From positions 41,192,234 through 41,256,233 of the forward strand of contig NC_068989.1 in NCBI RefSeq assembly GCF_001194135.2: a stretch of DNA of 64,000 nucleotides, in the 5' to 3' direction. A program made the position numbers and the translations under genes. Under the pieces are notes generated by a model that had not been told where the DNA came from, searched no databases, and saw nothing but the letters and a program-made list of their open reading frames with translations. The DNA comes from Octopus bimaculoides (Eukaryota). Positions 14,584 through 39,349 of this stretch are shown piece after piece. The first letter of the stretch is position 1. Every line of letters begins with the position of its first letter.

Positions 14584-14631
<48 letters not shown>

Positions 14632-14994
14632 TTTTCACCCTTCCTCCTAAGGTTTTATATTCCCTCCCTACACTCAGGTAGAAATATCCAATTAATAAAA
14701 GAAAATTATAAAAACGTTATTAAGTCACAGAAACAAAACTAAGAACATAATTAGGATGTCATTGTTAAGGACATCAGAGCGAAATTCCCTAACACCACTG
14801 CTCTCCATGAGACATCATTGCTATACTCTCTAAATCAGCATCGACATCGTCAAGAAGCCAAGGAGCATGCTTTACAACAGCAGACAATAAGTTGTCTAAG
14901 AAAGCTTTCTGTTGACTAGCTTCTGCAGTCTTCTCCTTCAGTTCTTCTAAAAGGTCTTCCTGAAAATAAACAAGAAAAAAAAGCGTGTATGTGA

Positions 14995-15040
<46 letters not shown>

Positions 15041-15885
15041 TGTATACATATATATATATAATGTATATGTATACATATATATATATATATATANNNNNNN
15101 NNNNNNNNNNNNNNNNNNNNNNNNNNNNNNNNNNNNNNNNNNNNNNNNNNNNNNNNNNNNNNNNNNNNNNNNNNNNNNNNNNNNNNNNNNNNNNNNNNNN
15201 NNNNNNNNNNNNNNNNNNNNNNNNNNNNNNNNNNNNNNNNNNNNNNNNNNNNNNNNNNNNNNNNNNNNNNNNNNNNNNNNNNNNNNNNNNNNNNNNNNNN
15301 NNNNNNNNNNNNNNNNNNNNNNNNNNNNNNNNNNNNNNNNNNNNNNNNNNNNNNNNNNNNNNNNNNNNNNNNNNNNNNNNNNNNNNNNNNNNNNNNNNNN
15401 NNNNNNNNNNNNNNNNNNNNNNNNNNNNNNNNNNNNNNNNNNNNNNNNNNNNNNNNNNNNNNNNNNNNNNNNNNNNNNNNNNNNNNNNNNNNNNNNNNNN
15501 NNNNNNNNNNNNNNNNNNNNNNNNNNNNNNNNNNNNNNNNNNNNNNNNNNNNNNNNNNNNNNNNNNNNNNNNNNNNNNNNNNNNNNNNNNNNNNNNNNNN
15601 NNNNNNNNNNNNNNNNNNNNNNNNNNNNNTATGCATATACATTATATATATATATATATGTATGCATATACATTATATATATATATATATATATATATGC
15701 ATATACATTATATATATATATATATATATGCATATACATTATATATATATATATATGTATGCATATACATTATATATACATATCTATTATTGAGTCAGAC
15801 ATGGCCTAGGCCTATACTGGCCGAAGCCTATCTAAGTTATCAAAGTTATATATACATACATAAATACATACATATTTATGTATAC

Positions 15886-15918
<33 letters not shown>

Positions 15919-15963
15919 TATATACATATATACACACACGCATATATACATAAGTACATATTT

Positions 15964-15996
<33 letters not shown>

Positions 15997-16005
15997 CACA
16001 TGTAT
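14570..16005. repeat. (ATT)n and compound (TA)n/(TACA)n microsatellites flanking the terminal exon, with an N gap
   Basis: Directly visible. Similar arrays lie at 50-100, 2690-2820, 17295-17485, 32890-33165, 35545-36480, 36860-37010, 42850-42975, 54730-54840, 57670-57782 and 61294-61364. Confidence 0.95.
14789..14959 (-). CDS. Terminal coding exon of the host gene: EDLLEELKEKTAEASQQKAFLDNLLSAVVKHAPWLLDDVDADLESIAMMSHGEQWC*; FIP-RBD-like motif
   Basis: Acceptor cttgtttattttcag|GAAGAC, 56 codons plus TAG, phase 0. Gapless by-eye match to the FIP-RBD pattern (L..L.........Y/F-I/L-D.LL..I/V....P..L). Confidence 0.85.
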   Translation of the reverse strand, partial: EDLLEELKEKTAEASQQKAFLDNLLSAVVKHAPWLLDDVDADLESIAMMSHGEQWC

Positions 16006-16270
16006 AAAAACTAAACATTATACAATCAACAGATAATATCCTAAATATTAGGGATGAAACCGTCTCTCCCTGCATACACAAGCAATATTTTACTCTCAGA
16101 TACATCATCTGCAACAGCGATCGCACCAGGATAGCCCCTTTCATGATCACAAAATCTGAACACAGACAGCAAACAAACTCCACACACAGAAGAAATATGC
16201 CCCAATGACGAACTGCCTCAGCACACAATTATAAGAACACCAAACCCAAAACAAAATAATGTACCTACAC

Positions 16271-16368
16271 CTTAGCACTATCGTGGCATCTGATGTGGCT
16301 TTTTAAATCAGAAAATGTTCTGAAAAGACACCCACATAGATTGCACCTCTGATTTGGGCCACCAATAC
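16271..16368 (-). CDS. Coding exon with a C2H2 zinc finger: (S)IGGPNQRCNLCGCLFRTFSDLKSHIRCHDSAK
   Basis: atctgcag|GT...GCTAAG|gtgtag, 98 nt, phase 1 to 0. Exact C-x2-C-x3-F-x5-L-x2-H-x3-H spacing. Splices in frame to the terminal exon. Confidence 0.85.
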
Positions 16369-17291
16369 CTGCAGATAAATGTCTGTAAATATGTATATAT
16401 CTTTGTTTTTCTTTTGTTTTATTTTTTTATATGTGTATATATGTATAATTTTACTTTATATATATATGATTTTTTTATCTTTTAATTGCATATTTTTTAC
16501 TTTTTTATATTTATATATAATTCTTATTTACATTAGCAAATCACATATCATATATGGGGCACCAAGTCAGTTCGGTATTATCCGCTCAGCTCAAAGTAAG
16601 ATGAACAAAAATCAAATAAGTAACAAAGATTAATACAATACAGCCATTTAAGGAGGCTTCATTTAGATCTCTTTGTAGTGTCCTATGTTTTCTAATGTAG
16701 GCCTGTTTAACTGAAAATAATAAAAGAGTTTATGTTACCCCTACCCTACCTCTTTTTCTGGGCCTTTACCACTATCTAATTGACTTCTTTTGACATTTGT
16801 TTCTTGAAGTTGTGTCAAGGGAATTCATAGCCCTGGTGAATTATGGTTTGAGAGAACATCTAATAATATTTATTTATAACCAGCAGCTAGTTCTGAACTA
16901 TCAACTCCAAGTACTCTTAATTCTCAACAAACACAATATACTAGCTGCATTAAATCTTTTTAATCATAAGGAGATAGATAACAATTGGAAATGAATTACA
17001 ATCTCATAACCCCCAGTGTGTTCCATTTCTGCAACTCCAAAATTGTAGTTGTTTTCTCTCTTAGTTTATTTCTGCTACGATAGTCACAGCATGGAATTCT
17101 TTCATTCTCTAGCTCTTATAAAATATTTGCTAAAAATTATATTAGAATATCCTGTCTGTTGAAAATCTATATTTTTGCAACTGAAGATGGCATTGTATTT
17201 CAAATTGATGTAATGCTTGCATTGTTCAATTAAATGGAGCCACCCAAAACAGCTGTATTGCCTTAACACCTTGACATCCTTGTTACTCATT

Positions 17292-17344
<53 letters not shown>

Positions 17345-18489
17345 TATATACACACACACATATATACACACACACACACATATATACACACACACATATA
17401 TACACACACACACACATATATATACACACACACACACACATATATACATACACACACACATATATATACATACATACATATACATATCATTGTTATTATG
17501 CAAAAGTGTTGTAAGTCCAAAACATTGCTTTTTCAGAAAACAAAAAAAATAGTTTTACCATTACATAGCAAAACCATTGTACTACTCTTTGACAATTTTT
17601 GATGTCTTGGCATCTGAAGCTGGAGATACAATAGTTTGACTGAAAGACTGCAATAGTTTGACTATTGCAAGCAAAAATAAATATTGAAAAAAACGCATTT
17701 GGCCAAATTTGGATATTCGACAGTTTAATATAATAGCAACAATATATACATACATATACATATATAAATGCACTTATACACACACACACATTATTTACCT
17801 ACATACACATGCAGATACACATAATGAATAAAAAACATGTAAAACACAGAAAAATGAAAAAAAACTTCAAAGATCAAAGAATGTGTACAATGAAAAGTAA
17901 AAGGAGTAACTGAAGGCAGAGAAAATAGAAATTATACAAAAATTTACGACATTGTTTACGTATAAAATATAGGTAAGATTAAGACTATGTGAGGGTGGGA
18001 GGATTGGAGTTGAGAGTTGAGAATATTAAATTTTGAATTGATGACTTTCAAGTGACAATAGATGTGAAGTTATGGTGGTTGACTTCAAACCAGAGATTTT
18101 GCTCCAGTTTTTGGCCATTTTCTTGTACCTTTAAACAAAATATTTAACTCTGTTTGCTCTGACTAAAACTCTGTTCCAACTGAACAAATGCAGGTTCCAC
18201 TTACATTTCAGAGTTCATTTCTATCCTCTATTTCACAGTTTGTCAAGATCTCACCACTACACAAAGTGTTTCCTCTTAGATAAAATGGTTTTAAATTAAG
18301 GTGTCAAAAGAATATAGCCAGCTACTGAGGTCCCTTATGTGCTTAAGTTTATTGATTCTGCATGTATGAAATACAAGGTCAACCTTTCAATGATTTAAAC
18401 AAAGAAATATAATGGACTGAATCCATTTTGAAGCTCTACATCCAGGTCCTTAACACTCCTCTTAAAATATCACAGCTTAATATTGATTT

Positions 18490-18890
18490 CAGATTTTAGC
18501 ACAAGGCCAGAAATTCCACAGAAGTATGGTAAGTTGATTACCTCAACCTCAGTACTCAACTGGTACTTATTTTATCAACCCTGAAAACATGAAAGGCAAA
18601 GTCAATGTAAAGACTAACGAAATGCTGCTAAGCAATTTGCCCAGTGTACTAAAAATTCTGCCTGCTTGCTGCCTTATCATAACTTAATATTCTAGTAAAG
18701 AAGGTGGCGAGTAGGCAGCATTGTTAACATGCCAGTCTTTGCATTCTGAGTTCAAATTTCACCAAGGTTGACTTTGCCTTTCGTCCCTTTACGGGTCAAT
18801 AAAATAAGTATCAGTTCATCATTGAGGGTGATATAATCAACTTACCCCTCCCTTGAAACTACTGGCCTTATGGCAAATTTTGAAACCAAC
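18490..18890. mobile_element. Head-to-head inverted pair of SINE family A copies
   Basis: Minus copy about 18490-18675 (actggtacttattttatcaaccc...atgaaaggcaaagtcaa); plus copy about 18700-18890 (ttgactttgcctttcgtccc...gtcaataaaataagtatcagt). Confidence 0.75.
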
Positions 18891-19164
18891 ATTCTAGTAA
18901 AGAAATCTGATGATATCAAGATATGACCTTGCCCTAAGTGTGAAAGTATAGAGCTTCTGAATGAGAATCTTAAGCAAACCACAGATGCAGACTTGATCAA
19001 ACATGAATATGCTGTCACACTTCATTTTAAAAGTGGAAGGAAGATTAAATAATTCTCTGTGTTTCAACAGAGAGGATTCAATAGTTTGACTAAATGAATT
19101 TTCTACTCATTGAAGTAGCATGTAAGTAGCTGAATATTCCAAAGATACACATATCCTTGTGGAT

Positions 19165-19420
19165 GTATGTGGCTTAGTGGTTAGGGTGTTGGACTCATGA
19201 TCGTAAGATTGTGGTTTCGATTCCTGGACTAGACAATGTATTGTGTTCTTGAGCAAAACACTTCATTTCATGTTGCTCCAGTCCACTCAGCTGGCAAAAA
19301 TGAGTAATCCCATGATGGACCGGCGTCCCCTTCAGGTGGGGAATTTATATGCAATGGAAACCAGGAAACTGGCCCTTATGAGTCGGTATGCCTCAAGAAG
19401 GTAACCTTTACCTTTATCTT
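19165..19420 (+). mobile_element. tRNA-headed SINE family B
   Basis: tggcttagtggttaggg (A box), ggtttcgattcc (B box), gttcttgagcaaaacacttcatttca body. Confidence 0.85.
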
Positions 19421-20099
19421 TACATGTATCCCTAACATAATTCTTAGGCAGAATCAGCATGATACAGTGACAAGGCTGATTACAGGTACAATCAATCCAA
19501 CAGTCTTCTGAACAGTTTCAGTCTATGTAATTATACTAACAAGGTGTGGGTCAACTTGAGGCTATGAAAGAGACATTTGTACTTGATGCCATATGTTGGA
19601 TTCAAACCAGAGAACTAAAGGCTGCAAAAGCAAACTTCTTAACCATCTGGCCATACTGCAACCTGCTGAGGGTAATGAAGGGAGGGGTAATATTAGCATA
19701 ATGGCTCTTACAAGCCTAAAACAGAGGGGATAGTAGGAAGGGTAATTTGATAAAACTGATGTAGGGGATGGTCAATTTAAATTCTTGAAAGTCAATAGTT
19801 TATGGTTTGTGAATGTAAACAAGGATAGAGAGGAATGCTCTGACATGTAAGAAAGGGAATCAGTTCTACAAATGGAAAATTGAAATTTTTAGCACTGAGT
19901 TGGAATGAGAGTGGGGAGGTTAAAGGTATAGTGGCATGGAAAGAGGAGGCTGATATGCATGGGTGATAGCTGGTCTTCCATAAAGCAACCTTGCCCAGAC
20001 TTGTGCCTGGGAAGGTAACTTTCTAGTTAATGCTTCTGTAGGCTTGATATGGTTTTAGCATGTCACTTGACCTTAAATATTATCCGCTTAACAATCAGC

Positions 20100-21240
20100 A
20101 CTATTTTATTTTTGTCCTGTAGAGCACCTATTTAATATATTCTTATTACATACTGATATTTACCTAATTTTTACAACAATTCGCTATATACGAAGTTTAG
20201 CCATATTTTTTTCCCCTAGTCTTCATTGACCTGTTGGCCTACCGCAGCCTGTTGCCTCCCCTTAAAACTTAATTTGTAGGTCTCTATGTTCCCCTCTCAT
20301 ATGTTATACTGTTAAGAGACTGAAGGACATAAGTCACCCTTAAATTCTACTCGTCTTATTTCCCTTACCTTTTTTCCTTCCTTTCTTTTTCTTGTTTATC
20401 AATAAACAAAACCTTCGTAACAGTTTTAACTCGTGAATTGTTTTAAATTGTTATTAACCAATGTAGAGACTGCTGGCCTTAGACTTACTCCATTGTGTAC
20501 CATAGGGGGGTTTCTTGGTATCAATTTCCTGTGAGAACATTTTTTATTTAGTAACCTACATGAATTGTTTAACATTACTTAAGTTTACTCTGTTTAACAT
20601 AGGTTTGACCTTTGAGAATTATGTTAGTATCTTATCTACATAGAGCTTCTGGAAAACTTCTTCCTTTAACACCCTGACCCCACCCCTCCTAACTGCACCC
20701 TCCCATTAATAACTTGTAGTATTCCCTAGTCCTTTAATAGCTCATTCTGTCATCTACATTCTTTGAGCTCGGATGTTAAATACTCATCAGATGTTGAGCT
20801 CAGATGTTAAATGTACACTTAACATATTGGGCTTTTAGACTATTTGTCTAAACTATGTTTTCTTACCTCTTCTTTCTTCTTTTTGTTTATATTGTATGCT
20901 CTTGTTTTTCACTCTGATGAAGATCCGTTGCCCTAATTCGAATACCCTATGAAGATGAAGAATTTTATTCTCGCATTTATGTATAGGGTATCTGATCAGA
21001 AACATTCTGGGTATCTGATCAGAAACAGTTGTTAGCTTTGTATCAATAAACAAGGTTTAAATGTGGTCCTATCGATGTACTGGCTAATCTATGGATTTCT
21101 CCATTTTCTAATTATTTGCATTGGTTCCTGATAAACTTTTGTTTATCCTATTGTCACCTGCGCTTAATGTATAGGGTGTCCCTGAACATCATTGTCTGGG
21201 GATAACACCGGTAACGGATACTGATAGTATATACAGATAT
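20100..21240 (-). mobile_element. Probable old LINE 3'-end remnants
   Basis: Higher-complexity sequence with short broken reading frames and internal duplications (tatctgatcagaaaca x2; tgagctc.gatgttaaat x2). No diagnostic motif. Confidence 0.3.
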
Positions 21241-21301
21241 TTTATCCCTTTGTCGGTTACATCAACCACTAACTCTATTTATTTATTTATTTATTTATAT
21301 A

Positions 21302-21329
<28 letters not shown>

Positions 21330-21336
<7 letters not shown>

Positions 21337-21760
21337 GCCATATTTCCTGATATTACCCATGGTGGCAAAAGTATACCATTTCAAAGTCACCCATCTTAGT
21401 GAGTTCCAAATGTGGTGTCTATGTCAGTTACTTGATGTCTCTCTACATGACTGAATCTCAAACAACATCTGAAAACAATACCAGCAACAGCTGAACTTTG
21501 AAGACCAAGTCTGGCAGTACAGGCTATAGTTGAGCACTGGAGGACAACCACACCAATTTTGTGGTGACATTGACCCACACACTGGAGAATCCAGCACAGT
21601 GCCCCAAAGAAGACATGGGCCAAACAAACTGAGGAAGACCTGAAGTCACAGTGCTTCAACCTCAAGCATGCTAAGATCAGTGCTATGGATTGGAAAGCAT
21701 GGAGTAACATCATCACCAGAGTCCGTCATCTAGCAGAACCCATGGCTGCATATTGATTGA
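21330..21760 (+). mobile_element. Degenerate RTE-clade LINE C-terminal remnant
   Basis: WRIQHSAPKKTWAKQTEEDLKSQCFNLKHAKISAMDWKAWSNII resembles the RTE C-terminal R..GRP..TW...VEEDL...DR..W pattern. Confidence 0.6.
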
Positions 21761-21867
21761 GAGGACAGCCTCCATCTCTGGTCACCAGCTAGGGATTTTA
21801 CTTACTTATAAAAATAATGGTGGGGGTGTTAATGGGGGTAAATGTCATATTTTACTATGACTAAGGA

Positions 21868-22226
21868 CGTCGAGGGTTCCAGTTGATCCGATCAACGGAA
21901 CAGCCTGCTCGTGAAATTAACGTGTAAGTGGCTGAGCACTCCACAGACACGTGTACCCTTAACGTAGTTCTCGGGGATATTCAGCGTGACACAGTGTGAC
22001 AAGGCTGACCCTTTGAATTACAGACACAACAGAAACAGGAAGTAAGAGTGAGAGAAAGTTGTGGTGAAAGAGTACAGCAGGGTTCGCCACCATCCCCTGC
22101 TGGAGCCACGTGGAGCTTTAGGTGTTTTCGCTCAATAAACACTCACAACGCCCGGTCTGGGAATCGAAACCGCGATCCTATGACCATGAGTCCGCAGCCC
22201 TAACCACTGGGCCATTGCGCCTCCAT
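21868..22226 (-). mobile_element. Full-length young tRNA-headed SINE (family B) with a 12-bp TSD
   Basis: Minus-strand head GGAGGCGCAATGGCCCAGTGGTTAGGG...GGTTTCGATTCC (Pol III A/B boxes). TATGACTAAGGA flanks it at 21856-21867 and 22227-22238. Confidence 0.9.
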
Positions 22227-22306
22227 TATGACTAAGGAATACATGTAATAATAGACAAAAATATCTGATACAAATTATATAGACAAAACATAATTCAAAT
22301 ACTTAC

Positions 22307-22393
22307 TTTTGAGTCTGAAAGGTTCCTCCAACATTCTTGATCTGCATAACCTTCCTGAGACAGTGAATCTGTTTGGAAATGAAGATTTAGCAA
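22307..22393 (-). CDS. Coding exon (V)AKSSFPNRFTVSGRLCRSRMLEEPFRLK
   Basis: tgtattttaag|TT...CAAAA|gtaagt, 87 nt, phase 1/1, consensus donor, fits both neighbours. Confidence 0.75.
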
Positions 22394-22619
22394 CTTAAAA
22401 TACAAATGTATTTACAGAATCTACCATGCTTGGATAAGTGCCATAGTAATATATTTCACATGTCACATGACTGGTACACACTAACAAAAAAAAAAAAAAT
22501 CAACCAAACTAATTCACAACGGGGGGGGTAAAATACACAGCTTTTAGTGCATTGCAGTGGTTGCCAAACTAAAGAGGGAAGGAGATAAGAAACTGATGTC
22601 ATGACAGTGAATAACATTT

Positions 22620-22671
22620 CATGGTGGTGGTGATAGTGGTGGTGGTGTCCGTGATGGTGGTGACAGTGGTG

Positions 22672-22708
<37 letters not shown>

Positions 22709-22755
22709 CATTTCGTTGTTGTTGTTGTTGTGGTTGTTGTGATGTTGTTGCTGTT
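22620..22755. repeat. Compound trinucleotide microsatellite (GGT)n-(TTA)n-(TTG)n
   Basis: Directly visible; it produces the spurious V/L/C-rich ORF at 22621. Confidence 0.9.
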
Positions 22756-23341
22756 ATTCCATGCTATGATTGTTCACCTTTGGTTACAAAGCTGGAACCA
22801 AATACCAAATATCACATGCTGACTCTTCAAGACTGAAACTATCCATAGGAAGAGCAGAAGTACGTACACCGAACATGAAAAATGAAGTCTTTTTCTTGGG
22901 GTCTTTTTTTTTAAGTGACGGTGGGGGGTAGGAACGCAGAGGAGGAACATAATCATGTGCGCACGCAAATAAATAAATAAACAAATATTTATGTAGTTTA
23001 ATCATAAATAAATAAATAAATAAACAGACCACAAATTTACAATAAAGGCAAAATTCTAGAGTCAAATTTCAAATCTGTTGCTTGCTTGTCTGACTTGATA
23101 TAGAATACATACAACACTGATAGACTCATTTCAGATGCTAAAAGAACCAATCAAAATCATCTAACTCACCAAACAGCAGTGCTGCGAACTAGAATTTGAC
23201 AAATGCAGAGAAGCATGAGACTATAGCAATAATGATATTCAATAATATTCAATGAAGAATTTTGAAGACATAGAAATAACAGTCATCAAAGCAAACAAAG
23301 ACATTTTCGTGTGATAATTAAATGATAAATATATAAATGTT

Positions 23342-23647
23342 TATATTTATTTATATAAGGGCATTACTATACAAGAATGCCTCACGCTATGAGGGACTCT
23401 AAGGTCAGACTACCATAATAAACACATTTTTACCGAACGCAAGGAAATGCAACTCTCAAAGCTAGCCCCTTAAAAACAGACTGAATTATAGATCATGATT
23501 TCGTAGTTATTGTAGTATTATACAACTTGTACTCGACAACATTTCCTCGCGTTCAGTAAAAATGTGTTTATTATGGTAGTCTGACCTTAGAGTCCCTCAT
23601 AGCATGAGGCATTCTTGTATAGTAATGCCCTTATATAAATAAATATA
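23342..23647. repeat. Fold-back MITE-like element, 108-bp arms (3 mismatches), 90-bp spacer
   Basis: 23342-23449 is the reverse complement of 23540-23647. Confidence 0.9.
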
Positions 23648-30123: not shown

Positions 30124-31956
30124 TTAACCACAAGACTATTAAACAATATTTCATTTAATGAAAAGTCTATTAAAGTCATTTTAACGACAAAACTATTAAA
30201 GTTAGTTTAATGACAGGTTTATTAAATAATGGTTTAATGGCAAGACTATTAAATAATAAGTTTAATGACATGATTATTGATTAAGTTAGTTTCATAATAA
30301 CATTACTAAATAATAGTTTAATGACAAAATTATTAAATACTAGGTTAGGTTGATGACAAGACTATTAACAGTTCCATGTTAATTTACTGCCAAAACTATT
30401 AAATAGAACATTTAACAACAAGACTATTAAATAAAACATTTAACAACAAGACTATTAAATAAAACATTTAATAGCAGGATTACGAAATAGTTCAATAATA
30501 AAATTATTAAATAGTCTAATGACAAAACTATGAAATAGTTTAATGACATGAATGTGAACTGGAAAACTTTAATAACAATTTAATAACAAGTCAATCAGTT
30601 TAATGGCAAGACTTTTAAATACTTTAATGTTGAAACTATTTATCAGATAGTTTAATGACGAAAGTAGCTCATTGTTAGTTTAATGATAAACATATTAAAT
30701 AATTATAGCTTGTCAAAATCATTAAATAATTTAATGACAAAACTAATTAGTTTAACTACAAGAATACAAAATGGAAAGTTAGCTTAATGACAAAATTATT
30801 AAATTAGTTGAATGACAACACTAAAAATAATTCATTTAATTAAATGGCTAAAAAATGGAAAATTAGTTTAATAACAAGACTGTTAATTAGATAGTTAAAT
30901 GATAAAAAATATTAAATAGTTAGTTTAATGACAAAACTACTATATAATCAGTTTAATGACAAGAATATTAAACAATTTGATGGAAAGACAATTAAATTAG
31001 ATATAACAGAGGCTTGTAAATCATCTAGGTTTAAGCATACATGAAACACAACAGCTGAGTAAGTACTAAACATAATATAGTGAGGAAAACCTTTTCATTA
31101 ATTAAAAACACCCCTGCAATGACTACAAGGACACACTGGGTACACAGCTCATGCTAATCAAATTTTCCCTCTGCCTTCATTAGATTTAATTAATATGAGT
31201 CATTCATCATTATCATCAGTAACAGCAGCAGTGGTAGCAGTATCATTTAATGACCATGCCAAAACAGACAGTGAAGCTCGGTGCAGTCCTCTCATTTTCC
31301 ACCTCCTGTCAAACCATCAAAATGAGTGAAAGCGTGCACAAGCAAAAGTTACAGCAGGGAAGACAGATACTAAAGGATGATGATGTTCCATGCTAACATA
31401 GGTAAGACAGTTTGACAGGATCTCAGAGGTTTGCATTGTACTTCAATGTCTGCTTTGCCACGGTTTTCTGGGGCTGGATACAATCACTTTACATCAATCA
31501 CTTTACAGTGTGTACTGGATGCTTTGTTCCATGGCACCAGCACTAGTGAGGTCACTATGCACTTTTGCAATGACTAAAATCCCTTTGAACTGGGTGGGGT
31601 TACAGTAGAGAGGGAGATAGCATTATGCAATGAGAAGAAAGGTTAACGTATAAAAAATAGGATCAGAACAAAACAGGTTTCTTGTTGTAGAGGAGCTATA
31701 TGGCTACCCATGTTATTAAAGAGAGGGTGAGAGTGATCAAAATGGAGGTGGAAGAAGATATAAGAATAGTAATGAGGTGTCAGGGTGGACCCTCAAGATA
31801 CAAAGGTGATAAGTAGGTGACAAGCATAAGTTCACTTCTCCTCACTACAACAGTAATTTTAATTATTATTTCTTAGTTCACTATGTCAATTATGTTAGCA
31901 CTCAATCAGTTTGTTACTTTAACAACAAAAGTGACAAATGAAAAAATTAGTTTAAC

Positions 31957-32091
31957 CTGTAATATATATTTATCCTTTGCCTCTTCTGTTTTTTGGTTTA
32001 CCCCATCATTTAACAATACATCTAAATCTTTTTCTTTCATCTGCAGAACAAGATCTCTTAGTTTTTTCCAACGCCACTCTGAAGATGATAG
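31957..32091 (-). CDS. Coding exon LSSSEWRWKKLRDLVLQMKEKDLDVLLNDGVNQKTEEAKDKYILQ
   Basis: Strong acceptor ctttctttctctttag|CTA, donor CAG|gttaaa (an in-frame alternative GGG|gtaaac lies 45 nt earlier), 135 nt, phase 0/0. Confidence 0.75.
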
Positions 32092-32675
32092 CTAAAGAGA
32101 AAGAAAGACAGAGAAAAAGAGAAATAATGGAATGGAATGGAATTCAAGTTGTAAGTTCTGGTGAAAGAACAAAAATGGGTTTTGTTGGTTCTTATTGTAG
32201 TGCAATGCAGCTGTGGGTAACCTAGTTGCAAAACATTAGTGTTACATCAGTGGAGAAAGATAGGTCACACACAATACTGAAAACAAAATGGAAAGAGTGA
32301 ATTAAAAAAAAAAGCTTCTATTGGTCAGATTCCAAGATGGAAACATAACAAAAAAGCCATAGGTACAACCTAGTGATACAAATAAAGAGGAAAATGAAAA
32401 AAAAAGAAAAAAAAACGATGGGAACTTAGATTTTATTCCCTCAAAAGGAAAAAAATATAACATAGATCAGTTTTCAAATTTTTGTTTAATTTTCTTTAAT
32501 AAACTTTAGTTTTTACTTCCATCACAATCAAATTACTATTGATACACAGATAAATATATATATATATACATACAAATACATACGTATATACACACATATA
32601 TACATACGTACATACACATACATACATATACGTATTTATATATATGAATATATATAATATATATACATATATATG

Positions 32676-32810
32676 GTGATTAAATTCAAAATAAGCAACA
32701 AGGATATACAAAAGTAATGCAGTGCGATCATTTCATGCGACTCCATTTAATTGAGCGATCGTACTGCATTACTTTTGGATATCCTTGTTGCTTATTTTGA
32801 TTTTAATCAC
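32676..32810. repeat. Hairpin, 54-bp arms (3 mismatches), 27-nt loop
   Basis: gtgattaaattcaaaataagcaacaaggatatacaaaagtaatgcagtgcgatc pairs with 32757-32810. Confidence 0.85.
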
Positions 32811-33005
32811 ATTATTTTGAAACTGTATGGATAATACACTACAAAATTCTGGTGCCTAAACTTAAGCACCATATTCACCTGAATCTAAATTTTTTACATA
32901 TATATATATGTGCATATACATATATATATATGCATATATAGAGAGGCATATATATATATATCTATATGCATATATACACATATGCAATTACACACACACA
33001 TACAC

Positions 33006-33046
<41 letters not shown>

Positions 33047-33164
33047 TATATATATATATATCAATATCTATATATCTATGTGCATATATATAAATATATT
33101 TATACACACATGTAAACATATGTATATATATATAAATATTTATATTTACATATCTATATATATG

Positions 33165-33368
33165 CAACGACGAGGGTCTCAGCTGATACGATCAACGGAA
33201 CAGCTTGCTCGTGAAATTAACATGCAAGTGACTGAGCAATCCACAGACACGTGTACCCCCCAACGTAGTTCTCAGGGAGACTCAGCCTGACGCATAGCGT
33301 GACAAGTCTGGCCCTTTCAAATACAGGTACTACTCATTTTTGCCAGCTGAGTGGATTGGAGCAACATG
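33165..33368 (-). mobile_element. SINE family B 3' part, cut by a gap
   Basis: gatcaacggaacagc...cgtgaaattaac...cacagacacgtgtaccc matches 21880-22010. Confidence 0.8.
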
Positions 33369-33468
33369 NNNNNNNNNNNNNNNNNNNNNNNNNNNNNNNN
33401 NNNNNNNNNNNNNNNNNNNNNNNNNNNNNNNNNNNNNNNNNNNNNNNNNNNNNNNNNNNNNNNNNNNN

Positions 33469-34448
33469 CATATGCTTGGGTATTATGGACGAGCAGCTAG
33501 AAGAAAACCTTTCCTTCAGCCAATTAATATCATGAAAAGAAAGAAATGAGCTAAGGAGATGCCAGAAAAATCCAGTTCATTTTGGGATAGAGTGATTTTC
33601 TCAGATGAATCCAGATTTGCATTATTTTCAGATAGTGTTCATGTTTGGGTCTGGAGATTTCCCAATCAAGAATTTGATTTGAATCAACTCAAACCAACTG
33701 TGAACCATAGCAGTATCTCTGTAACGGTATAGGGAGCTGTCACCAGCAATGGTCGTTCTGAGCTGATTGAATGTGTTGGAACCATAAACTCTGAAAAATA
33801 CATCGAAATACTTAAGCAAGGACTACTTCTGATGTATTCACATGATAACATGATGAAAACGAGTTTTTATTCATGGAAGACGGGGCTCCATGCCACACAA
33901 CGAAAAGGAATCAACAATGGCTGACTGAAAATGGGATCAAAAAGCTTCCTTGGCCGAGCCAATCTCCTGACATGAACCAATTGAAAATCTTTGGAGCATA
34001 TTAGATAGAGCTATACGAAAAACTGGACAGAAACCTAAATCTAAAGGTGAGCGAAACCTAAATCTAAGGTGGTGAGCTGGCAGAAACGTTAGCACGCCGG
34101 GCGAAATGCTTAGCAGTATTTCGTCTGCCACAACGTTCTGAGTTCAAATTCCGCCGAGGTTGACTATGCTTTTCATCCTTTCGGGGTAGATAAATTAAGT
34201 ACCAGTTACACACTGGGGTCGATGTAATCGACTTAATCCCTTTGTCTGTCCTTGTTTGTCCCCTCTATGTTTAGCCCGTTGTGGGCAATAAAGAAATAAG
34301 AAACGTAAATCTAAAGATGAATTGTTTCGATTGTTGTGTAAAACGTGGGCAGAAATTCCACAAGTGACAATCATAAAACTCATCAGTTCAATGCCAAAAA
34401 GAGTTTCTGAATTAAAAACTGCAAATGGAATGTCAACTCAATACTAAA
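33469..34448 (+). mobile_element. Tc1-family DD34E transposase pseudogene interrupted by a SINE
   Basis: GYYGRAARRKPFL...WDRVIFSDESRF...EDGAPCH...WPSQSPDMN(P)IENLW. 34 residues lie between the second D and E. Stops and frameshifts are present. Confidence 0.92.
34068..34299 (+). mobile_element. Young SINE family A (core gcctttcatcctttcggggtcgataaattaagtaccag) nested in a Tc1 transposase
   Basis: Full copy ggtgagctggcagaaacgttagcacg...aaagaaataa, flanked by gaaacc/gtaaatctaa duplications. Confidence 0.9.
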
Positions 34449-34616
34449 GTATGTAGTCCTACCTATCGATTACATTTGAATTGTTCGCTTTGCGTATTAA
34501 ATGAAAGATTTTGAAAATAAAATGTGCCTATTTAGTCCCTGCACATGTGTGTATATGTGATGATGATGATGATATACATATATATACATATACCCATATA
34601 GATATATACATTATCA

Positions 34617-35545
34617 TCATCATCGTTTAACATCTGCTTTCCATGCTGGCATGGGTTAGTCAGTTTGACTGGAGACTGGCAAGCCAGGAGGCCTCACAGG
34701 CTCCAATCTCATCTGGTATGGTTCTACAGCTGGATGTAACGCCAACCACTCCAAGAATATAGTGGGTTGTTTTTATGTGCCACCAGCACGGGAGCCAGTC
34801 AGGCAACACTGGCATCGGCCACAACTACAATTTCCATTTTTGATTGTGATTTGATTTTTGATTTTACTCGACACAATAGGTCTTCTCAAATACAGCATGT
34901 TGCCCTACGATTCAAAGGTACTTTTTAAATGGGCCAGTTATGCAACACTGGTATAGGCTACAGCTGTGATCTCACTTTATTTGCCAGGTCTTCTCAATCA
35001 CAGCATATATCCAGAGGTCTCGGTCTCTTGTCATCGCCTCTGTGTGGCCCAACATTTTGAAGGTCATGCTTCACTACTTCCTCCCATGTCTTCGTCTTCC
35101 ACGAGTTCCTTCCACTGTTAGGGAATGGCACTTCTTCACACAGTTCTCCTCATCCATATGTAGCTCATGACCACACCAGCGCAGACATCTTGCACACCAC
35201 ATCTGATGCTTTTTATGTCCCAACATTTCTCTTAGGGCGCTTACACTCAGTTGTGCGTACACTGACATTACACATCCAGCGGATCATACTAGCTTCATTT
35301 CTTTCAAGCCTACGCATGTCTTCAGCAATCATGGCCCATGTTTCACTGCCATATAGCATGGTAGTTTGCACACATGTGTCATACAGTCTACCATTCACTC
35401 TATAGAGGTAGGAGCTTTCTGAACTTTGTCCAGGCTATTCTTATTCTAGTGGCAATGCTGTCCGAGCATCTACTCCCAATACAGTCTTGGTCACCTAGGT
35501 AGCAGAAGCTATCAACTACTTCCGGTTTCTTCCCCTGGCATTTGA
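34617..35545 (-). mobile_element. 5'-truncated RTE LINE, degenerate RT C-terminus, 3' UTR and (GAT)n tail
   Basis: EVVDSFCYLGD...RIRIAW.KFR.LLPL / RLYDTCVQTTMLYGSETW / LRWCGH motifs across frameshifts. Confidence 0.9.
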
Positions 35546-36312
35546 TACACACACATATATATATGTATATATATATATACATACATANNNNNNNNNNNNN
35601 NNNNNNNNNNNNNNNNNNNNNNNNNNNNNNNNNNNNNNNNNNNNNNNNNNNNNNNNNNNNNNNNNNNNNNNNNNNNNNNNNNNNNNNNNNNNNNNNNNNN
35701 NNNNNNNNNNNNNNNNNNNNNNNNNNNNNNNNNNNNNNNNNNNNNNNNNNNNNNNNNNNNNNNNNNNNNNNNNNNNNNNNNNNNNNNNNNNNNNNNNNNN
35801 NNNNNNNNNNNNNNNNNNNNNNNNNNNNNNNNNNNNNNNNNNNNNNNNNNNNNNNNNNNNNNNNNNNNNNNNNNNNNNNNNNNNNNNNNNNNNNNNNNNN
35901 NNNNNNNNNNNNNNNNNNNNNNNNNNNNNNNNNNNNNNNNNNNNNNNNNNNNNNNNNNNNNNNNNNNNNNNNNNNNNNNNNNNNNNNNNNNNNNNNNNNN
36001 NNNNNNNNNNNNNNNNNNNNNNNNNNNNNNNNNNNNNNNNNNNNNNNNNNNNNNNNNNNNNNNNNNNNNNNNNNNNNNNNNNNNNNNNNNNNNNNNNNNN
36101 NNNNNNNNNNNNNNNNNNNNNNNNNNNNNNNNNATACATACATATATATATATACACACATACACATGCATACATACATATGTATATATATATATACATA
36201 CATACATATATACATACATATATACATACATATAGATATGTATGTATATATGTATGTATACATACACACATAGATTTATACAGATATATATATACCCATA
36301 TATGTAGGCATA

Positions 36313-36350
<38 letters not shown>

Positions 36351-36955
36351 CATACATTTATATACATACATATATATACATACATATACAAACATTTATA
36401 TGCATACATATATATACATACATATATATACACATACATACATACATACATACATATATGTTGGTATGTGTATGCATGAGTGAATGTTTGTCAGATTGCA
36501 GTGTGTTAACAATGAGTGAAAGCGTGCACAAGCAAAGGTAAGATTGAAATATTTAGTGTTTTGTGCAAACAGTTTTTATGATTTTATAAAGGAAGTTTTC
36601 AAATAATACAATTATAAGAGCAGAGTTAAATGAATGCAGTGAGGGCATATCAACATCATCATCATTTACTGTCTATGTTCCAACCTGGCATGGGTTGGAT
36701 GGTTTGACAGGACCCACTGGGTCAAGCACAGCATTGTGCTCCTGTGTGCTTTGACAAGGTTCCTACGACAGATGCCCTTCCTAAACATGGACTTGTTGCT
36801 ATTTTCATGGTAGAAACACTTGTAAAGTTGCCAGCACTAATAAAGTCACTTAGTACAGAGTGTATATAAATGTGTGTACTTACATGTATATATGTGTGTG
36901 TGTGTATGTGTGTATATATATTTGTGTGTGCGCATGTGTGTATATATGGATGGAT

Positions 36956-37010
<55 letters not shown>

Positions 37011-37582
37011 NNNNNNNNNNNNNNNNNNNNNNNNNNNNNNNNNNNNNNNNNNNNNNNNNNNNNNNNNNNNNNNNNNNNNNNNNNNNNNNNNNNNNNNNNN
37101 NNNNNNNNNNNNNNNNNNNNNNNNNNNNNNNNNNNNNNNNNNNNNNNNNNNNNNNNNNNNNNNNNNNNNNNNNNNNNNNNNNNNNNNNNNNNNNNNNNNN
37201 NNNNNNNNNNNNNNNNNNNNNNNNNNNNNNNNNNNNNNNNNNNNNNNNNNNNNNNNNNNNNNNNNNNNNNNNNNNNNNNNNNNNNNNNNNNNNNNNNNNN
37301 NNNNNNNNNNNNNNNNNNNNNNNNNNNNNNNNNNNNNNNNNNNNNNNNNNNNNNNNNNNNNNNNNNNNNNNNNNNNNNNNNNNNNNNNNNNNNNNNNNNN
37401 NNNNNNNNNNNNNNNNNNNNNNNNNNNNNNNNNNNNNNNNNNNNNNNNNNNNNNNNNNNNNNNNNNNNNNNNNNNNNNNNNNNNNNNNNNNNNNNNNNNN
37501 NNNNNNNNNNNNNNNNNNNNNNNNNNNNNNNNNNNNNNNNNNNNNNNNNNTAAATACGTAGATGTGTGTGCATATATCATCA

Positions 37583-37790
37583 TCATCATCATCATCATCG
37601 TTTAACGTCCGCCTTCCATGCTAGCATGGGTTGGATGATTTGACTGAGGACTGGTGAAACCAGATGGCTACACAAGGCTCCAATCTGATTTGGCAGAGTT
37701 TCTACAGCTGGATACCCTTCCTAATGCCAACCACTCAGAGAGTGTAGTGGGTGCTTTTACATGTCACCCGCACGAAGGCCAGTCAAGCGG
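37583..37790 (-). mobile_element. RTE 3'-UTR/tail fragment. Similar pieces lie at 26250-26400, 31200-31600, 36650-36830, 38670-38880, 58030-58250 and 60480-60550.
   Basis: catcatcgtttaacgtccg...ccatgctagcatgggttgg...tttctacagctggat...cttcctaatgccaacc. Confidence 0.8.
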
Positions 37791-37819
37791 TATATATATA
37801 TATATATATATATATTTTT

Positions 37820-38653
37820 CGAGGTGGTATCAAAAGTTCCCAGACTAGTTCTACAGCATACCAACAAATGACAGCACACAGTTGCGTACACAGTGCGAGC
37901 TAGCTGTGACCTTCATGAGGCAGTGTGTTGAGAGATGTCACTGTGTTTATTTCATAAATTGTGAAATTTGTGATTACATGTATGCTGTAGTCTGCAATCT
38001 TCTCATGAACAAAGAACCAGTGTAAAATTTTGCATTAAACTTGGAAAGTTTGCTACAAAGACATCAAGCATACTTTGGAAAGATTATGGAAACGAGGCAA
38101 TGGGGTCGTATGCAATGTTTTGAGTGGCATGACTGCTTCAAAAGTGGAAGAATAACGTTGGAAGATGATGAGCGATTTGGAAGACCTGCCACAAGCGTCA
38201 TCCCCAGAAACGTGGTATTGTACATTGACAATTTGAACCCCGGAGCCAGACCCACAATTGAGAGTTATACTGTGATATTTTGAAGCATTTGACCTTGTCA
38301 CTGAGCTCTCCTCATTCGGGAGTTTCTCACCAAAAACAATGTGGTATTGCCTCTGCATCTATCATATTCACCAGATTTAGCACCTGCAGACTTCTATCTC
38401 TTTCCTAAGTTGAATATGCAGCTCAAAGGTCACTGTTTTAACACTATTGTTGAGATCTAGAGTGAATCGCAGAAGGTTCTCAACTCGCTTGTGGAAAATG
38501 AATTCCAGGCCAGATTCCAAAAGTGGTAGGAATGCTGGGACTGGTGTATTGCTGCGCAAAGTGATTAGGTTGAAGATGATTTTAAAGCTTAGGTAAAGAA
38601 GTTATTTTTTTTATTAAATATAACTAGTTCTGGAACTTTTTGATACCACCTCA
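37820..38653 (+). mobile_element. Internally deleted mariner element
   Basis: TIRs cgaggtggtatcaaaagttcc / ggaactttttgataccacctca. Remnants EQRTSVKFCIKLGK, EDDERFGRP and YSPDLAPADFYLFPKL. Confidence 0.9.
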
Positions 38654-38706
38654 TATATGCATGTCATCATCTTCATCTTCATTCAATATCCACCTTCCAT
38701 ACTAGC

Positions 38707-38763
38707 TTGAATTGGACACTTTGATTGGACACTTTGATTGGACACTTTGATTGGACACTTTGA
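38707..38763. repeat. 13-bp tandem repeat (TTGATTGGACACT) x about 4
   Basis: Directly visible; embedded in an RTE-tail-like fragment. Confidence 0.9.
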
Positions 38764-39247
38764 CAGGCATAAGGAAAGGTATCCAGTTGTAGAAACTAAT
38801 CTGAAGTAAACATTGAAGTTAGGTGCAACCCTCTGCTCATCAGTTCATGCCTAACTGCTGAAGCCATGCCACCATGGAAAAAGTGATATCAAATGATGAT
38901 GATGATGTATGTGTGTGTGTGTGTGTGCATCTATCTATCAAGTTACCTATCTATGTATCTATGTGTATGTGCTTGAGAATGTATGTATGTATATGTCTAT
39001 ATATATATGTATGTATGTATGTATATCTTTACAAATACTTCCAGAAATATTTTGCATTTAATACGTTAGCAACTGACAGTGATTTGATATGCAATTATTG
39101 GTACACTGGTGCATTCACAAAGAAATTACTTCAAGTAAGCTGGATGGGAGAGAACACATATTTATGTTAGCAGCTATTGCAGCAGGAGTGAAAAAAAGCA
39201 AGGGTGAGTGCTTTTGCTTTAATTCCTGTTCCCTAGAAAACCCTCAC

Positions 39248-39349
39248 CTTATTATTTAGTTTTGTGGGCTTCTCTGGACCCAGACAGCACCCCCAATATT
39301 GCAGAGAACAAATGAAACCAAGGTTTGACAGATATTGAGACAGCTTGAT
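39248..39349 (-). CDS. Coding exon IKLSQYLSNLGFICSLQYWGCCLGPEKPTKLNNK
   Basis: ctttttatttcag|ATC...AAG|gtgagg, 102 nt. The phase-0 frame is open to the donor; the phase-1 frame stops. Confidence 0.7.

What the first reader, a model, noticed from the sequence alone, without database searches (positions are those of the whole stretch)
14789..39349. Non-canonical Rab11-FIP-like gene: coiled coil, C2H2 zinc finger, then FIP-RBD
Seen: seven exons with compatible phases (0/0, 0/0, 0/0, 0/1, 1/1, 1/0, 0/stop) give 253 aa. The end reads ...QRCNLCGCLFRTFSDLKSHIRCH-DSAK-EDLLEELKEKTAEASQQKAFLDNLLSAVVKHAPWLLD. Known: the FIP-RBD (Pfam RBD-FIP) sits at the C-terminus of class I (C2-domain) and class II (EF-hand) Rab11-FIPs, with a Y-I-D-x-L-L core. 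I know of no canonical FIP with a C2H2 finger four residues before the RBD. Here the core is diverged (YID to FLD). Inference: a lineage-specific Rab effector in which a single finger (possibly ubiquitin-, RNA- or protein-binding) abuts the Rab-binding helix. None of this is visible in the supplied ORF track except the last exon.
Basis: partly seen in the sequence, partly recalled or inferred. Interest (0 to 1): 0.75.

Follow-up and report, generated by a model that had tools for sequence, protein, structure and literature searches.

The report
Mis-spliced zinc finger in octopus scaffold gene
The window holds the tail of an annotated but unstudied octopus gene, conserved across molluscs, whose protein really does end in a Rab11-FIP-like helix; the zinc finger said to sit next to that helix is an intronic reading frame that no known transcript uses.

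Summary
The region is the 3' third, on the minus strand, of Octopus bimaculoides LOC106871175, an "uncharacterized protein" with RefSeq isoforms X1-X5.

**What holds up.**
- 39349..39248 (a cassette exon)
- 32091..31957
- 29241..29161
- 27729..27642
- 14959..14789

**What does not.** The other two are not in any model:
- 22568..22482
- 16368..16271 (the C2H2 finger)

The true exon between the coiled coil and the last exon is 22368..22307 (DSLSQEGYADQECWRNLSDSK). It is conserved in Argonauta, squid and other molluscs. In Argonauta the intron that would hold the finger is 578 bp of tandem repeat, with no finger. All assembly gaps lie in introns.

**What the gene encodes.** It is a family found in cephalopods, gastropods and bivalves: SAM, PDZ, coiled coil, then a C-terminal helix. 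The helix motif [Y/F]-L-D-x-L-x-S-x-V-x3-x-P-W-x-L matches the Rab11-FIP binding motif. The match is modest: Pfam RBD-FIP 20.2 bits against a cut-off of 23.3, and hhalign E 3.4e-5. The protein ends in an invariant E-x-[W/F]-C. It has no C2 domain and no EF-hand.

**Verdict.** The headline architecture is an exon-chaining artefact. What remains is a modestly interesting, FIP-like scaffold found so far only in molluscs.

The parts
39248..39349 (-). Cassette exon IKLSQYLSNLGFICSLQYWGCCLGPEKPTKLNNK, phase 0/0. It is real but optional.
   Evidence: Present in O. bimaculoides isoform X2 (P0055) and O. sinensis X1 (P0064), absent from X5. The reading frame is kept in Argonauta at L001:39068-39145, with 73% amino-acid identity, pN 0.17 and pS 0.62.
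31957..32091 (-). Coiled-coil exon LSSSEWRWKKLRDLVLQMKEKDLDVLLNDGVNQKTEEAKDKYILQ, phase 0/0.
   Evidence: 100% match to P0001 residues 362-406. Argonauta ortholog at L001:42673-42804.
29161..29241 (-). Coiled-coil exon EEIRQLQEALNSSSKKINHLQKALESK, phase 0/0.
   Evidence: 100% match to P0001. Against Argonauta, pN 0.02 and pS 0.60.
27642..27729 (-). Coiled-coil exon TTALQELGTEHEQLRKKIENQSHKSTESD(G/D), phase 0/1.
   Evidence: 100% match to P0001. Donor is ACG|gttagt.
23170..23188 (-). Alternative 19-nt mini-exon (VRSTAVW). With the terminal exon near 4146 it produces isoforms that lack the RBD.
   Evidence: Isoform X3 (P0061) ends ...STESDVRSTAVWLKDLFAREKDYS. Mapped. Conserved in Argonauta (L001:45222-45242) and in squid or cuttlefish transcripts (P0079).
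22307..22368 (-). The true penultimate coding exon DSLSQEGYADQECWRNLSDSK, phase 1/0. It links the coiled coil to the RBD exon.
   Evidence: 100% match to P0001 residues 463-483. Acceptor aaacag|AT and donor AAA|gtaagt. Orthologous exon in Argonauta at L001:50419-50481. Corresponds to ...EYYxMTMESLNxxSAxK in bivalves and gastropods.
14789..14959 (-). Last coding exon including the stop: EDLLEELKEKTAEASQQKAFLDNLLSAVVKHAPWLLDDVDADLESIAMMSHGEQWC*. The FIP-RBD-like core QKAFLDNLLSAVVKHAPWLLD is at 14911..14849. The terminal EQWC is at 14803..14792.
   Evidence: Sequence read. The first 43 residues are identical in Argonauta although pS is 0.41.
4103..4146 (-). Coding part of an alternative terminal exon downstream of the RBD exon. 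It is read in different frames by different models: X3 LKDLFAREKDYS*, X4 GSRIYLQGRRTIVD*, O. vulgaris AQGFICKGEGL*.
   Evidence: Argonauta counterpart at L001:59238-59289.
16271..16368 (-). Intronic reading frame (G)IGGPNQRCNLCGCLFRTFSDLKSHIRCHDSAK with a classical C2H2 signature. It is not an exon of any known transcript.
   Evidence: - Sequence read. PDB finger hits.
- Absent from all isoforms and orthologs.
- Single copy in the window, with no counterpart in the Argonauta locus.
- Weak pyrimidine tract at the acceptor, 0.61.
22482..22568 (-). Intronic reading frame VWQPLQCTKSCVFYPPRCELVWLIFFFFV. It is not an exon.
Evidence: It is in no isoform. It runs through a T-run and ends at a poor donor, TTA|gtgtgt.

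Best explanation
**Shown.**
- Window 39349..4100 on the minus strand is the 3' third of Octopus bimaculoides LOC106871175.
- The gene is annotated but uncharacterised, and related proteins were found in cephalopods, gastropods and bivalves.
- Its 539-618 aa products are built of an N-terminal SAM domain, a PDZ domain, a coiled coil of about 100 aa, a short conserved linker exon, and a C-terminal amphipathic helix. The SAM and PDZ are encoded upstream of the window.
- The helix carries the motif Q-K-x-[Y/F]-L-D-x-L-x-S-x-V-x3-x-P-W-x-L. The protein ends in an invariant E-x-[W/F]-C.
- The C2H2 finger is not part of this protein. It is a lone finger-like reading frame inside the 7.3-kb last intron.
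- Alternative 3' exons (23188..23170 and about 4146..) give isoforms without the helix.

**Inferred, at about 50%.**
- The coiled coil makes a parallel dimer, and the C-terminal helix docks onto a GTP-bound Rab11-family GTPase, as the RBD of Rab11-FIPs does.
- The PDZ and SAM domains bring in cargo tails or partner scaffolds.
- Alternative splicing would then switch the Rab link on or off.
For: **Gene identity.**
- An exhaustive HMMER search returned P0001 (E 5.5e-84), which is XP_052826614.1, LOC106871175 isoform X5.
- The last 178 aa of P0001 and the last 212 aa of X2 equal the window translation exactly.

**The finger is not used.**
- All isoforms X1-X5, O. sinensis X1-X3 and a 1751-nt squid or cuttlefish RNA contig join ...STESD-DSLS..DSK-EDLL... 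with no finger.
- The O. vulgaris and Argonauta models also carry no finger.
- The Argonauta exon5-to-last intron is 578 bp of 40-bp tandem repeat.

**The real exons are under purifying selection.** Between Octopus and Argonauta, pN is 0.068 against pS 0.54.

**Domains.**
- SAM_2 scores 24.4 bits, above the 20.5 cut-off.
- The PDZ fold is confirmed by an AlphaFold model (pLDDT 75-91 over residues 241-330) with Foldseek PDZ hits at probability 1.00.
- Helices are predicted at residues 394-457 and 483-532.

**FIP-like helix.**
- Pfam RBD-FIP is the only hit of the last exon (E 5.4e-4), and nine controls gave no such hit.
- 13 of 18 family members hit it, and full-length P0004 scores 23.7 bits, above the cut-off.
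- hhalign against the RBDs of FIP1, FIP2 and FIP3 gives E 3.4e-5 and probability 72%.
- The family's L of [Y/F]-L-D aligns with the Ile whose change to Glu abolishes Rab11 binding in FIP1C, FIP2, FIP3 and FIP5. FIP4 has YMD at this site (PMC9282008).
Against: **Against the Rab11-binding inference.**
- The octopus RBD-FIP score (20.2 bits) is below Pfam's cut-off of 23.3.
- The family profile does not retrieve any Rab11-FIP chain from the PDB at E<=10, and neither does the last exon alone.
- The similarity covers only about 21 residues of an amphipathic helix.
- No binding experiment exists, and no multimer model could be run.

**Against dismissing the finger.**
- It has legal AG/GT borders and the same phases (1/0) as the real exon 5.
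- Its G+C content is exon-like (0.42).
- Its consensus is unlikely to arise by chance in a single window.
- No RNA-seq of O. bimaculoides itself could be examined here.
Confidence: 0.82

Rival explanations
1. The C2H2 reading frame at 16368..16271 is a genuine but rare or tissue-specific exon restricted to Octopus. It would be used in place of exon 22368..22307, since both are phase 1/0. The product would be an isoform with a single finger directly before the Rab-binding helix.
For: - It has an AG acceptor and a GT donor, and splicing 27642 to 16368 and 16271 to 14959 keeps the frame.
- It carries an intact classical C-x2-C-x3-F-x5-L-x2-H-x3-H signature, which did not occur in any of 200 composition-matched simulations.
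- Its best single-finger alignment, to a BCL6 finger, scores 19 bits.
- Its G+C is 0.42, like the real exons and above the 0.34 background.
Against: - It is absent from all five O. bimaculoides and all three O. sinensis RefSeq isoforms, from the O. vulgaris and Argonauta models, and from squid or cuttlefish mRNA contigs.
- The orthologous Argonauta intron is 578 bp with no finger.
- Using it would delete a linker exon that is conserved across molluscs.
- Its pyrimidine tract is weaker than that of the flanking real exons.
- From general knowledge, not tested here: octopus genomes carry very large numbers of C2H2 finger genes, so stray finger relics are expected in a genome-wide scan.
Confidence: 0.06
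2. The gene is as described, but the C-terminal helix is not a Rab-binding domain. Its likeness to the FIP RBD would be the convergent look of a short amphipathic helix after a coiled coil. The family would be a CNK-like SAM-PDZ scaffold. Its conserved tail would serve dimerisation, another partner, or presentation of the E-x-[W/F]-C end as a PDZ ligand.
For: - All but one of the Pfam RBD-FIP scores are below the cut-off.
- The family profile finds no FIP in the PDB.
- The whole-family profile's best PDB match is CNK2 SAM-to-PDZ, 9k1l_A, at E 7.5e-8. Drosophila CNK scores 0.0012, and Foldseek also lists both.
- The invariant terminal E-x-[W/F]-C resembles the DDWC/EDWC-COOH PDZ ligand of CaV2 channels (PMC11405698).
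Against: - The match is in register over the exact residues that define the FIP motif: [Y/F]-[I/L/M]-D-x-L, V, then P-x-[I/L]-L.
- It lies at the same place in the protein, the C-terminal end after a coiled coil.
- It is the only Pfam family hit by the exon, while the reversed and shuffled controls hit nothing comparable.
Confidence: 0.38
3. The finger-like frame is a decayed fragment of one of the many octopus C2H2 zinc-finger genes, or of a mobile element carrying one, that landed in this intron. The alternative is a pure chance frame. Either way it is non-functional here.
For: - The full consensus is too good for chance within one window.
- It is a single finger with a stop two codons after the claimed donor and no second finger nearby.
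- The intron is rich in microsatellites and interspersed repeats.
Against: - No near-identical finger protein appeared in the exhaustive search. The best finger hits are only 37-43% identical.
- No second copy exists in the window.
- The source of the fragment therefore cannot be named.
Confidence: 0.6

Closest known systems
Rab11 family-interacting proteins (Rab11-FIP1 to 5; Pfam PF09457 RBD-FIP)
   Same: - A coiled coil is followed by a short helix at the C-terminal end.
- The helix motif [Y/F]-L-D-x-L-x-x-x-V-x3-x-P-x-[L/I]-L lines up with YIDNLLVRVMEETPNIL of FIP1/2 and YIDRIIVAIMETNPSIL of FIP3.
- The key Ile position is a conservative Leu.
   Different: - It has no C2 domain (class I) and no EF-hand (class II). 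It has SAM and PDZ instead.
- The octopus score is below Pfam's cut-off.
- A 20-residue acidic tail ending in E-x-[W/F]-C follows the helix.
- Rab binding is untested.
CNK / CNKSR scaffolds (connector enhancer of KSR: SAM-CRIC-PDZ-PH)
   Same: An N-terminal SAM is followed by a PDZ in the same order and at similar spacing. CNK2 is the best PDB sequence match of the family profile (E 7.5e-8, SAM through PDZ). Foldseek lists the CNK SAM-CRIC-PDZ structures.
   Different: - No CRIC domain was detected by Pfam even at E<=10.
- The region between SAM and PDZ is mostly predicted to be disordered.
- There is no PH domain.
- The C-terminal half is a coiled coil plus the FIP-like helix.
EEA1 and Rabenosyn-5 N-terminal C2H2 fingers that bind Rab5
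   Same: This is the only well-known case in which a C2H2 finger is itself part of a Rab-binding module (PMC5902227).
   Different: Here the finger is not in the protein at all.
CaV2 calcium-channel C-terminal DDWC/DHWC/EDWC-COOH PDZ ligand
   Same: The family ends in acidic-x-[W/F]-C-COOH: EQWC, EEWC, EVWC or EEFC. This is the same rare non-canonical ligand type that is bound by Mint PDZ-1 and RIM PDZ (PMC11405698).
   Different: The protein is unrelated. Bivalves have F rather than W at position -1. No binding has been tested.

Membership tests
Rab11-FIP (RBD-FIP, PF09457) | The C-terminal segment scores at or above Pfam's gathering cut-off (23.3 bits) for RBD-FIP. | tested here: inconclusive
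   - The octopus last exon scores 20.2 bits, E 5.4e-4. This is the only family it hits. The reversed sequence and eight shuffles do not hit it.
- 13 of 18 family members hit it. Only full-length P0004 reaches 23.7 bits.
- hhalign against the RBDs of FIP1, FIP2 and FIP3 gives E 3.4e-5 and probability 72%.
- The reverse search, family profile against the PDB, finds no FIP.
Rab11-FIP (RBD-FIP, PF09457) | A conserved Y-[I/M]-D tripeptide whose central hydrophobic residue is required for Rab11 binding (I481E, I621E, I630E, I738E and YMD-to-AAA mutants). | tested here: met
   Octopus has F-L-D and the other molluscs have Y-L-D. L and D are invariant or nearly so in 18 sequences. They align to the YID of FIP1, FIP2 and FIP3. 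The mutant data are from PMC9282008. The substitutions are conservative, not identical.
Rab11-FIP (RBD-FIP, PF09457) | The RBD lies at the C-terminal end, directly after a dimerising coiled coil. | tested here: met
   AlphaFold predicts helices at residues 394-457 and 483-532 of 539. The motif lies at residues 500-520 of 539. Dimerisation itself was not tested.
Rab11-FIP (RBD-FIP, PF09457) | An N-terminal C2 domain (class I) or EF-hands (class II). | tested here: not met
   Pfam finds SAM and PDZ only in ten family members. The model and Foldseek confirm the PDZ. The class definitions are from PMC9282008.
Rab11-FIP (RBD-FIP, PF09457) | GTP-dependent binding to Rab11, Rab14 or Rab25 as a 2:2 complex. 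| not testable with these tools
   Only monomer prediction is available, and no experiment could be done.
   The frame at 16351..16283 fits exactly. Its best single-finger PDB alignment, to a BCL6 finger, scores 19 bits. Pfam zf-C2H2 gives only 14.2 bits against a cut-off of 25.2.
   It is absent from isoforms X1-X5, O. sinensis X1-X3, O. vulgaris, Argonauta and squid or cuttlefish transcripts. The Argonauta intron has no counterpart. Octopus RNA-seq itself was not available.
CNK / CNKSR scaffolds | An N-terminal SAM followed by a PDZ in one module. | tested here: met
   The profile hits CNK2 9k1l_A at E 7.5e-8, spanning profile positions 61-328, and Drosophila CNK at 0.0012. SAM_2 is above its cut-off. 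The PDZ fold is confirmed.
CNK / CNKSR scaffolds | A CRIC domain between SAM and PDZ, and in most members a PH domain. | tested here: not met
   No CRIC hit at E<=10 in five members. No PH domain was found. Residues 159-240 are predicted to be disordered.

The most novel reading that the evidence does not exclude
The SAM-PDZ-coiled-coil family is a third class of Rab11-FIP-like effectors, seen so far only in molluscs. Its Rab-binding helix would be switched in or out by the choice of 3' exon. Its invariant E-x-[W/F]-C end would copy the CaV2-channel PDZ ligand. The protein could then tie Rab11 recycling vesicles to RIM/Mint-type or other PDZ scaffolds, or fold back onto its own PDZ domain.
Probability: 0.15. 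Interest if true: 0.55.

Novelty: new variant of a known kind. Interest (0 to 1): 0.22.

Why it matters
**As stated, the finding does not matter.** A zinc finger fused to a Rab11-binding helix is a product of chaining open frames with legal splice signals across a 25-kb repeat-rich region.

**What is really there has modest value.**
- It is an unstudied gene family conserved across three mollusc classes.
- It joins a CNK-like SAM-PDZ front end to a FIP-like C-terminal helix, a domain combination I did not find described for Rab11 effectors.
- RBD-less splice forms are conserved across cephalopods.
- If the helix binds Rab11, it would widen the known architectures of Rab11 effectors and give a handle on recycling-endosome adaptors in molluscs.

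**A practical caution.** In octopus genomes a lone C2H2-like frame with AG/GT borders inside an intron is not evidence of an exon.

Tried and rejected
- **Word-indexed protein search with the 190-aa spliced query.** Nothing was found, although identical proteins are in the collection. The negative was a tool limitation, so I did not use it as evidence.
- **phmmer of the last exon against the PDB.** No hits.
- **Family C-terminal profile against the PDB.** No FIP chains. I kept this as evidence against strict FIP membership.
- **Profile search with the full-length family alignment, to reach beyond molluscs.** It returned only the same eight cephalopod and bivalve proteins. "Mollusc-only" therefore rests on the one exhaustive search and on the names.
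- **Fetching the Octopus loci to compare the finger-bearing intron between species.** The O. sinensis and O. vulgaris genes span 167 and 172 kb, so no DNA was returned. X2, P0057 and the old 161-aa model are not on record. A hypothetical finger-containing isoform could not be looked up.
- **Literature search for the locus names.** Nothing found.
- **CRIC domain search, to file the family under CNK.** Not found, so I rejected CNK membership.
I rejected it as a frame running through a T-run. The direct junction from 27642 to the next exon is already phase-compatible.
- **A nested zinc-finger gene in the intron.** I rejected this because there is only one finger and no start codon (the frame is not listed).

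Full report
**1.

All features lie on the minus strand. The quoted peptides map to 16351..16283 (finger) and 14959..14849 (helix). The last exon follows a strong acceptor (ttttcag|GAAGAC) and runs to a stop at 14791..14789. The finger frame is bounded by ctgcag|GT and AAG|gtgtag.

- 39349..39248
- 32091..31957
- 29241..29161
- 27729..27642
- 22568..22482
- 16368..16271
- 14959..14789

**2. The assembly gaps.**

The four gaps in the interval (15094-15629, 33369-33468, 35588-36133, 37011-37550) all lie inside introns. No frame is read across a gap. RefSeq proteins predicted from a 96.9-Mb chromosome-scale contig join the exons on either side of the gaps exactly as the window does. The C-terminal 212 aa of isoform X2 and the C-terminal 178 aa of X5 are identical to the window translation.

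**3. What the gene is.**

A word-indexed search with the spliced peptide found nothing. An exhaustive HMMER scan of 1.84 billion representative proteins returned a 539-aa protein at E 5.5e-84, plus a series of proteins of about 340-615 aa aligned over the whole query and, in nearly all of them, ending where it ends.

The top hit, P0001, is XP_052826614.1, [quoted passage not shown]. The other named hits are uncharacterised proteins from these genera:
- Gastropods: Haliotis, Lottia, Batillaria, Physella, Aplysia, Plakobranchus.
- Bivalves: Potamilus, Pinctada, Mizuhopecten, Mya, Mytilus, Saccostrea, Tegillarca.

tblastn places P0001 residues 366-539 in the window at 100% identity on five exons, and the full spliced translation equals its last 178 aa:
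- 32091..31957
- 29241..29161
- 27729..27642
- 22368..22307
- 14959..14792

The first 361 residues are not in the window. In O. sinensis and O. vulgaris the gene spans 167 and 172 kb.

**4. The finger is not part of it.**

In P0001 the segment between ...KSTESD and EDLLEEL... is DSLSQEGYADQECWRNLSDSK. It is encoded at 22368..22307 with acceptor aaacag|AT and donor AAA|gtaagt, phase 1/0.

- All five O. bimaculoides isoforms and all three O. sinensis isoforms were read. Every one that reaches the last exon uses this exon, and none contains the finger or the frame at 22568..22482. The O. vulgaris and Argonauta models contain neither.
- A 543-aa ortholog is encoded without interruption on a 1751-nt assembly of an RNA sequencing run (SRR19578109). 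It reads ...SDSDDSLSREALGNRENWRNLSESK-DDLLEEL.... This is direct transcript evidence, in a related cephalopod, for the finger-less junction.
- The linker exon is homologous to ...EYYxMTMESLNxxSAxK in bivalves and gastropods.
- In the Argonauta hians locus (L001) the orthologous exons lie at 50419-50481 and 51060-51230. The 578-bp intron between them is a 40-bp tandem repeat with no finger-like frame.
- The octopus finger sequence is single-copy in the window and has no match in L001.

It is present in O. bimaculoides X2 and O. sinensis X1 and is kept as an open frame in Argonauta.

**5. What the finger frame is.**

It fits the full classical C2H2 pattern. Its best single-finger alignment to a solved structure is 19 bits, to a BCL6 finger. 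Pfam zf-C2H2 gives only 14.2 bits against a cut-off of 25.2.

In 200 composition-matched simulations of the window, the bare spacing occurred 0.1 times per window and the full pattern never. Within one window it is therefore unlikely to be pure chance.

It is a single finger with a stop two codons past the claimed donor, no start codon, no neighbouring finger, and a weaker pyrimidine tract than the real exons. My reading is that it is a relic of a finger-coding sequence, or a rare chance frame, in a lineage-specific 7.3-kb intron. I leave about 6% for a genuine rare exon restricted to Octopus that would be mutually exclusive with 22368..22307. This cannot be excluded without Octopus RNA-seq.

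**6. The C-terminal helix.**

- The last exon alone hits one Pfam family, RBD-FIP (E 5.4e-4, 20.2 bits, cut-off 23.3, profile positions 3-38 of 41). Its reverse and eight shuffles give no such hit.
- Across 18 family C-termini, 13 hit RBD-FIP, with a best E of 3.4e-5. The full-length Pinctada protein scores 23.7 bits.
- The family consensus is E.V...LKEIV.EAS.QK.YLDRLISVVIEEAPWLLD.VDAD......EEFC. Q, L, L, V, W, L and the final C are invariant.
- I confirmed the real RBD sequences of FIP1, FIP2 and FIP3 from PDB chains.
- A profile-profile comparison aligns QKaYLDrLiSvVi..aPWlLd to LEDYIDNLLVRVMEETPNILR, with E 3.4e-5 and probability 72%.
- The aligned Leu corresponds to the Ile whose change to Glu abolishes Rab11 binding in FIP1C, FIP2, FIP3 and FIP5. 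FIP4 has YMD at this site (PMC9282008).
- FIP RBDs act as parallel dimers that bind two Rab11 molecules (PMC5902227; PMC9282008).

Against this:
- Neither the exon nor the family profile retrieves any FIP chain from the PDB.
- The similarity is short.

I put the chance that this helix is a working Rab11-family binding site at about one half.

**7. The rest of the protein.**

- **SAM:** SAM_2 is above its cut-off for the octopus N-terminus, at 24.4 bits.
- **PDZ:** Pfam PDZ scores are all below cut-off. An AlphaFold model built on the family alignment (mean pLDDT 62.7) gives a confident β-rich domain at residues 241-330. Foldseek matches this to dozens of PDZ structures at probability 1.00.
- **CNK resemblance:** the family profile's best PDB sequence match is CNK2 from SAM through PDZ (E 7.5e-8), followed further down the list by Drosophila CNK at E 0.0012. 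No CRIC or PH domain is detectable. The family resembles CNK in layout only.
- **Selection:** between Octopus and Argonauta the constitutive exons show pN 0.068 against pS 0.54. The first 43 residues of the last exon are identical. That is strong purifying selection.

**8. Alternative 3' ends.**

Isoforms X3 and X4 and the O. vulgaris model skip the RBD exon. They use a 19-nt mini-exon (23188..23170) and/or a terminal exon starting at 4146. The same forms exist in Argonauta and in squid or cuttlefish transcripts. The FIP-like helix is an optional module.

**9. Verdict.**

The frames, borders and phases are real. Five of the seven exons are true exons. Two are not, and one true exon was missed.
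There is a non-canonical FIP-like C-terminus, but no zinc finger in the protein.
- The gene is annotated but unstudied; a literature search for its locus names found nothing.
- Its domain combination, a CNK-like SAM-PDZ front end with a FIP-like tail, is a new variant of known kinds.
- Interest is low to modest.

Noticed in passing
window 14803..14792 (minus strand); alignment A1: Every full-length family member ends in acidic-x-[W/F]-C-COOH: EQWC in octopus, EEWC in squid or cuttlefish and Lottia, EVWC in heterobranchs, EEFC in bivalves and Haliotis. This looks like the rare non-canonical PDZ ligand DDWC/DHWC/EDWC-COOH of CaV2 calcium channels, which Mint PDZ-1 and RIM PDZ bind (PMC11405698). 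It could be a ligand for such PDZ domains or for the protein's own PDZ.
   Followed up: partly
window 23188..23170 and 4146..~4103 (minus strand); L001:45222-45242 and 59238-59289: Alternative 3' exons give isoforms that lack the FIP-like helix (X3 ...VRSTAVWLKDLFAREKDYS*, X4 ...GSRIYLQGRRTIVD*). The terminal exon is read in three different frames by different gene models. The RBD-less form is conserved in Argonauta and in squid or cuttlefish transcripts.
   Followed up: partly
window 45844..46260 and 46486..46758 (+ strand); 54261..53899 (- strand): Open frames that look like mariner/Tc1-type transposase fragments, judged from the sequence (for example ...LLYDNTHPNIANMTKEAIQTHGWEVLPHLLYSPDLAPTDFHFF...). 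They lie upstream of the mapped exons, probably in a large intron.
   Followed up: no
window 35434..35216 (- strand): A frame resembling a reverse-transcriptase or LINE fragment (...MLYGSETWAMIAEDMRRLERNEASMIRWMCNVS...), in the intron between the cassette exon and exon 32091.
   Followed up: no
proteins P0057, P0058, P0071 and P0044: The O. vulgaris and Argonauta orthologs are named "X-box-binding protein 1" by their sources. This is probably a name carried over from a 996-aa Mizuhopecten model (OWF42676.1) that shares a 90% cluster with the 601-aa family member and appears to fuse it to a neighbouring gene. The family has no bZIP hit in Pfam.
   Followed up: partly
L001:50482-51059 (Argonauta hians): The intron before the last exon is only 578 bp and consists almost wholly of a tandem repeat of about 40 bp (TGTGACCAATGTGTAAACTATAACTGCCACTGTGTTCTATAG...). 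The same intron is 7.3 kb in Octopus.
   Followed up: no
window 19262..19110, 20054..19892, 28718..28366 (- strand): Similar frames recur in two different introns (SVLLKNT.H..V.ES...; ...LESYL.R.KSGQ.C....). This suggests copies of an interspersed repeat.
   Followed up: no
The word-indexed protein search missed proteins 100% identical to about 150 aa of a 190-aa query. It found them when the full 539-aa protein was the query. Negatives from that tool with short spliced queries should not be trusted.
   Followed up: partly
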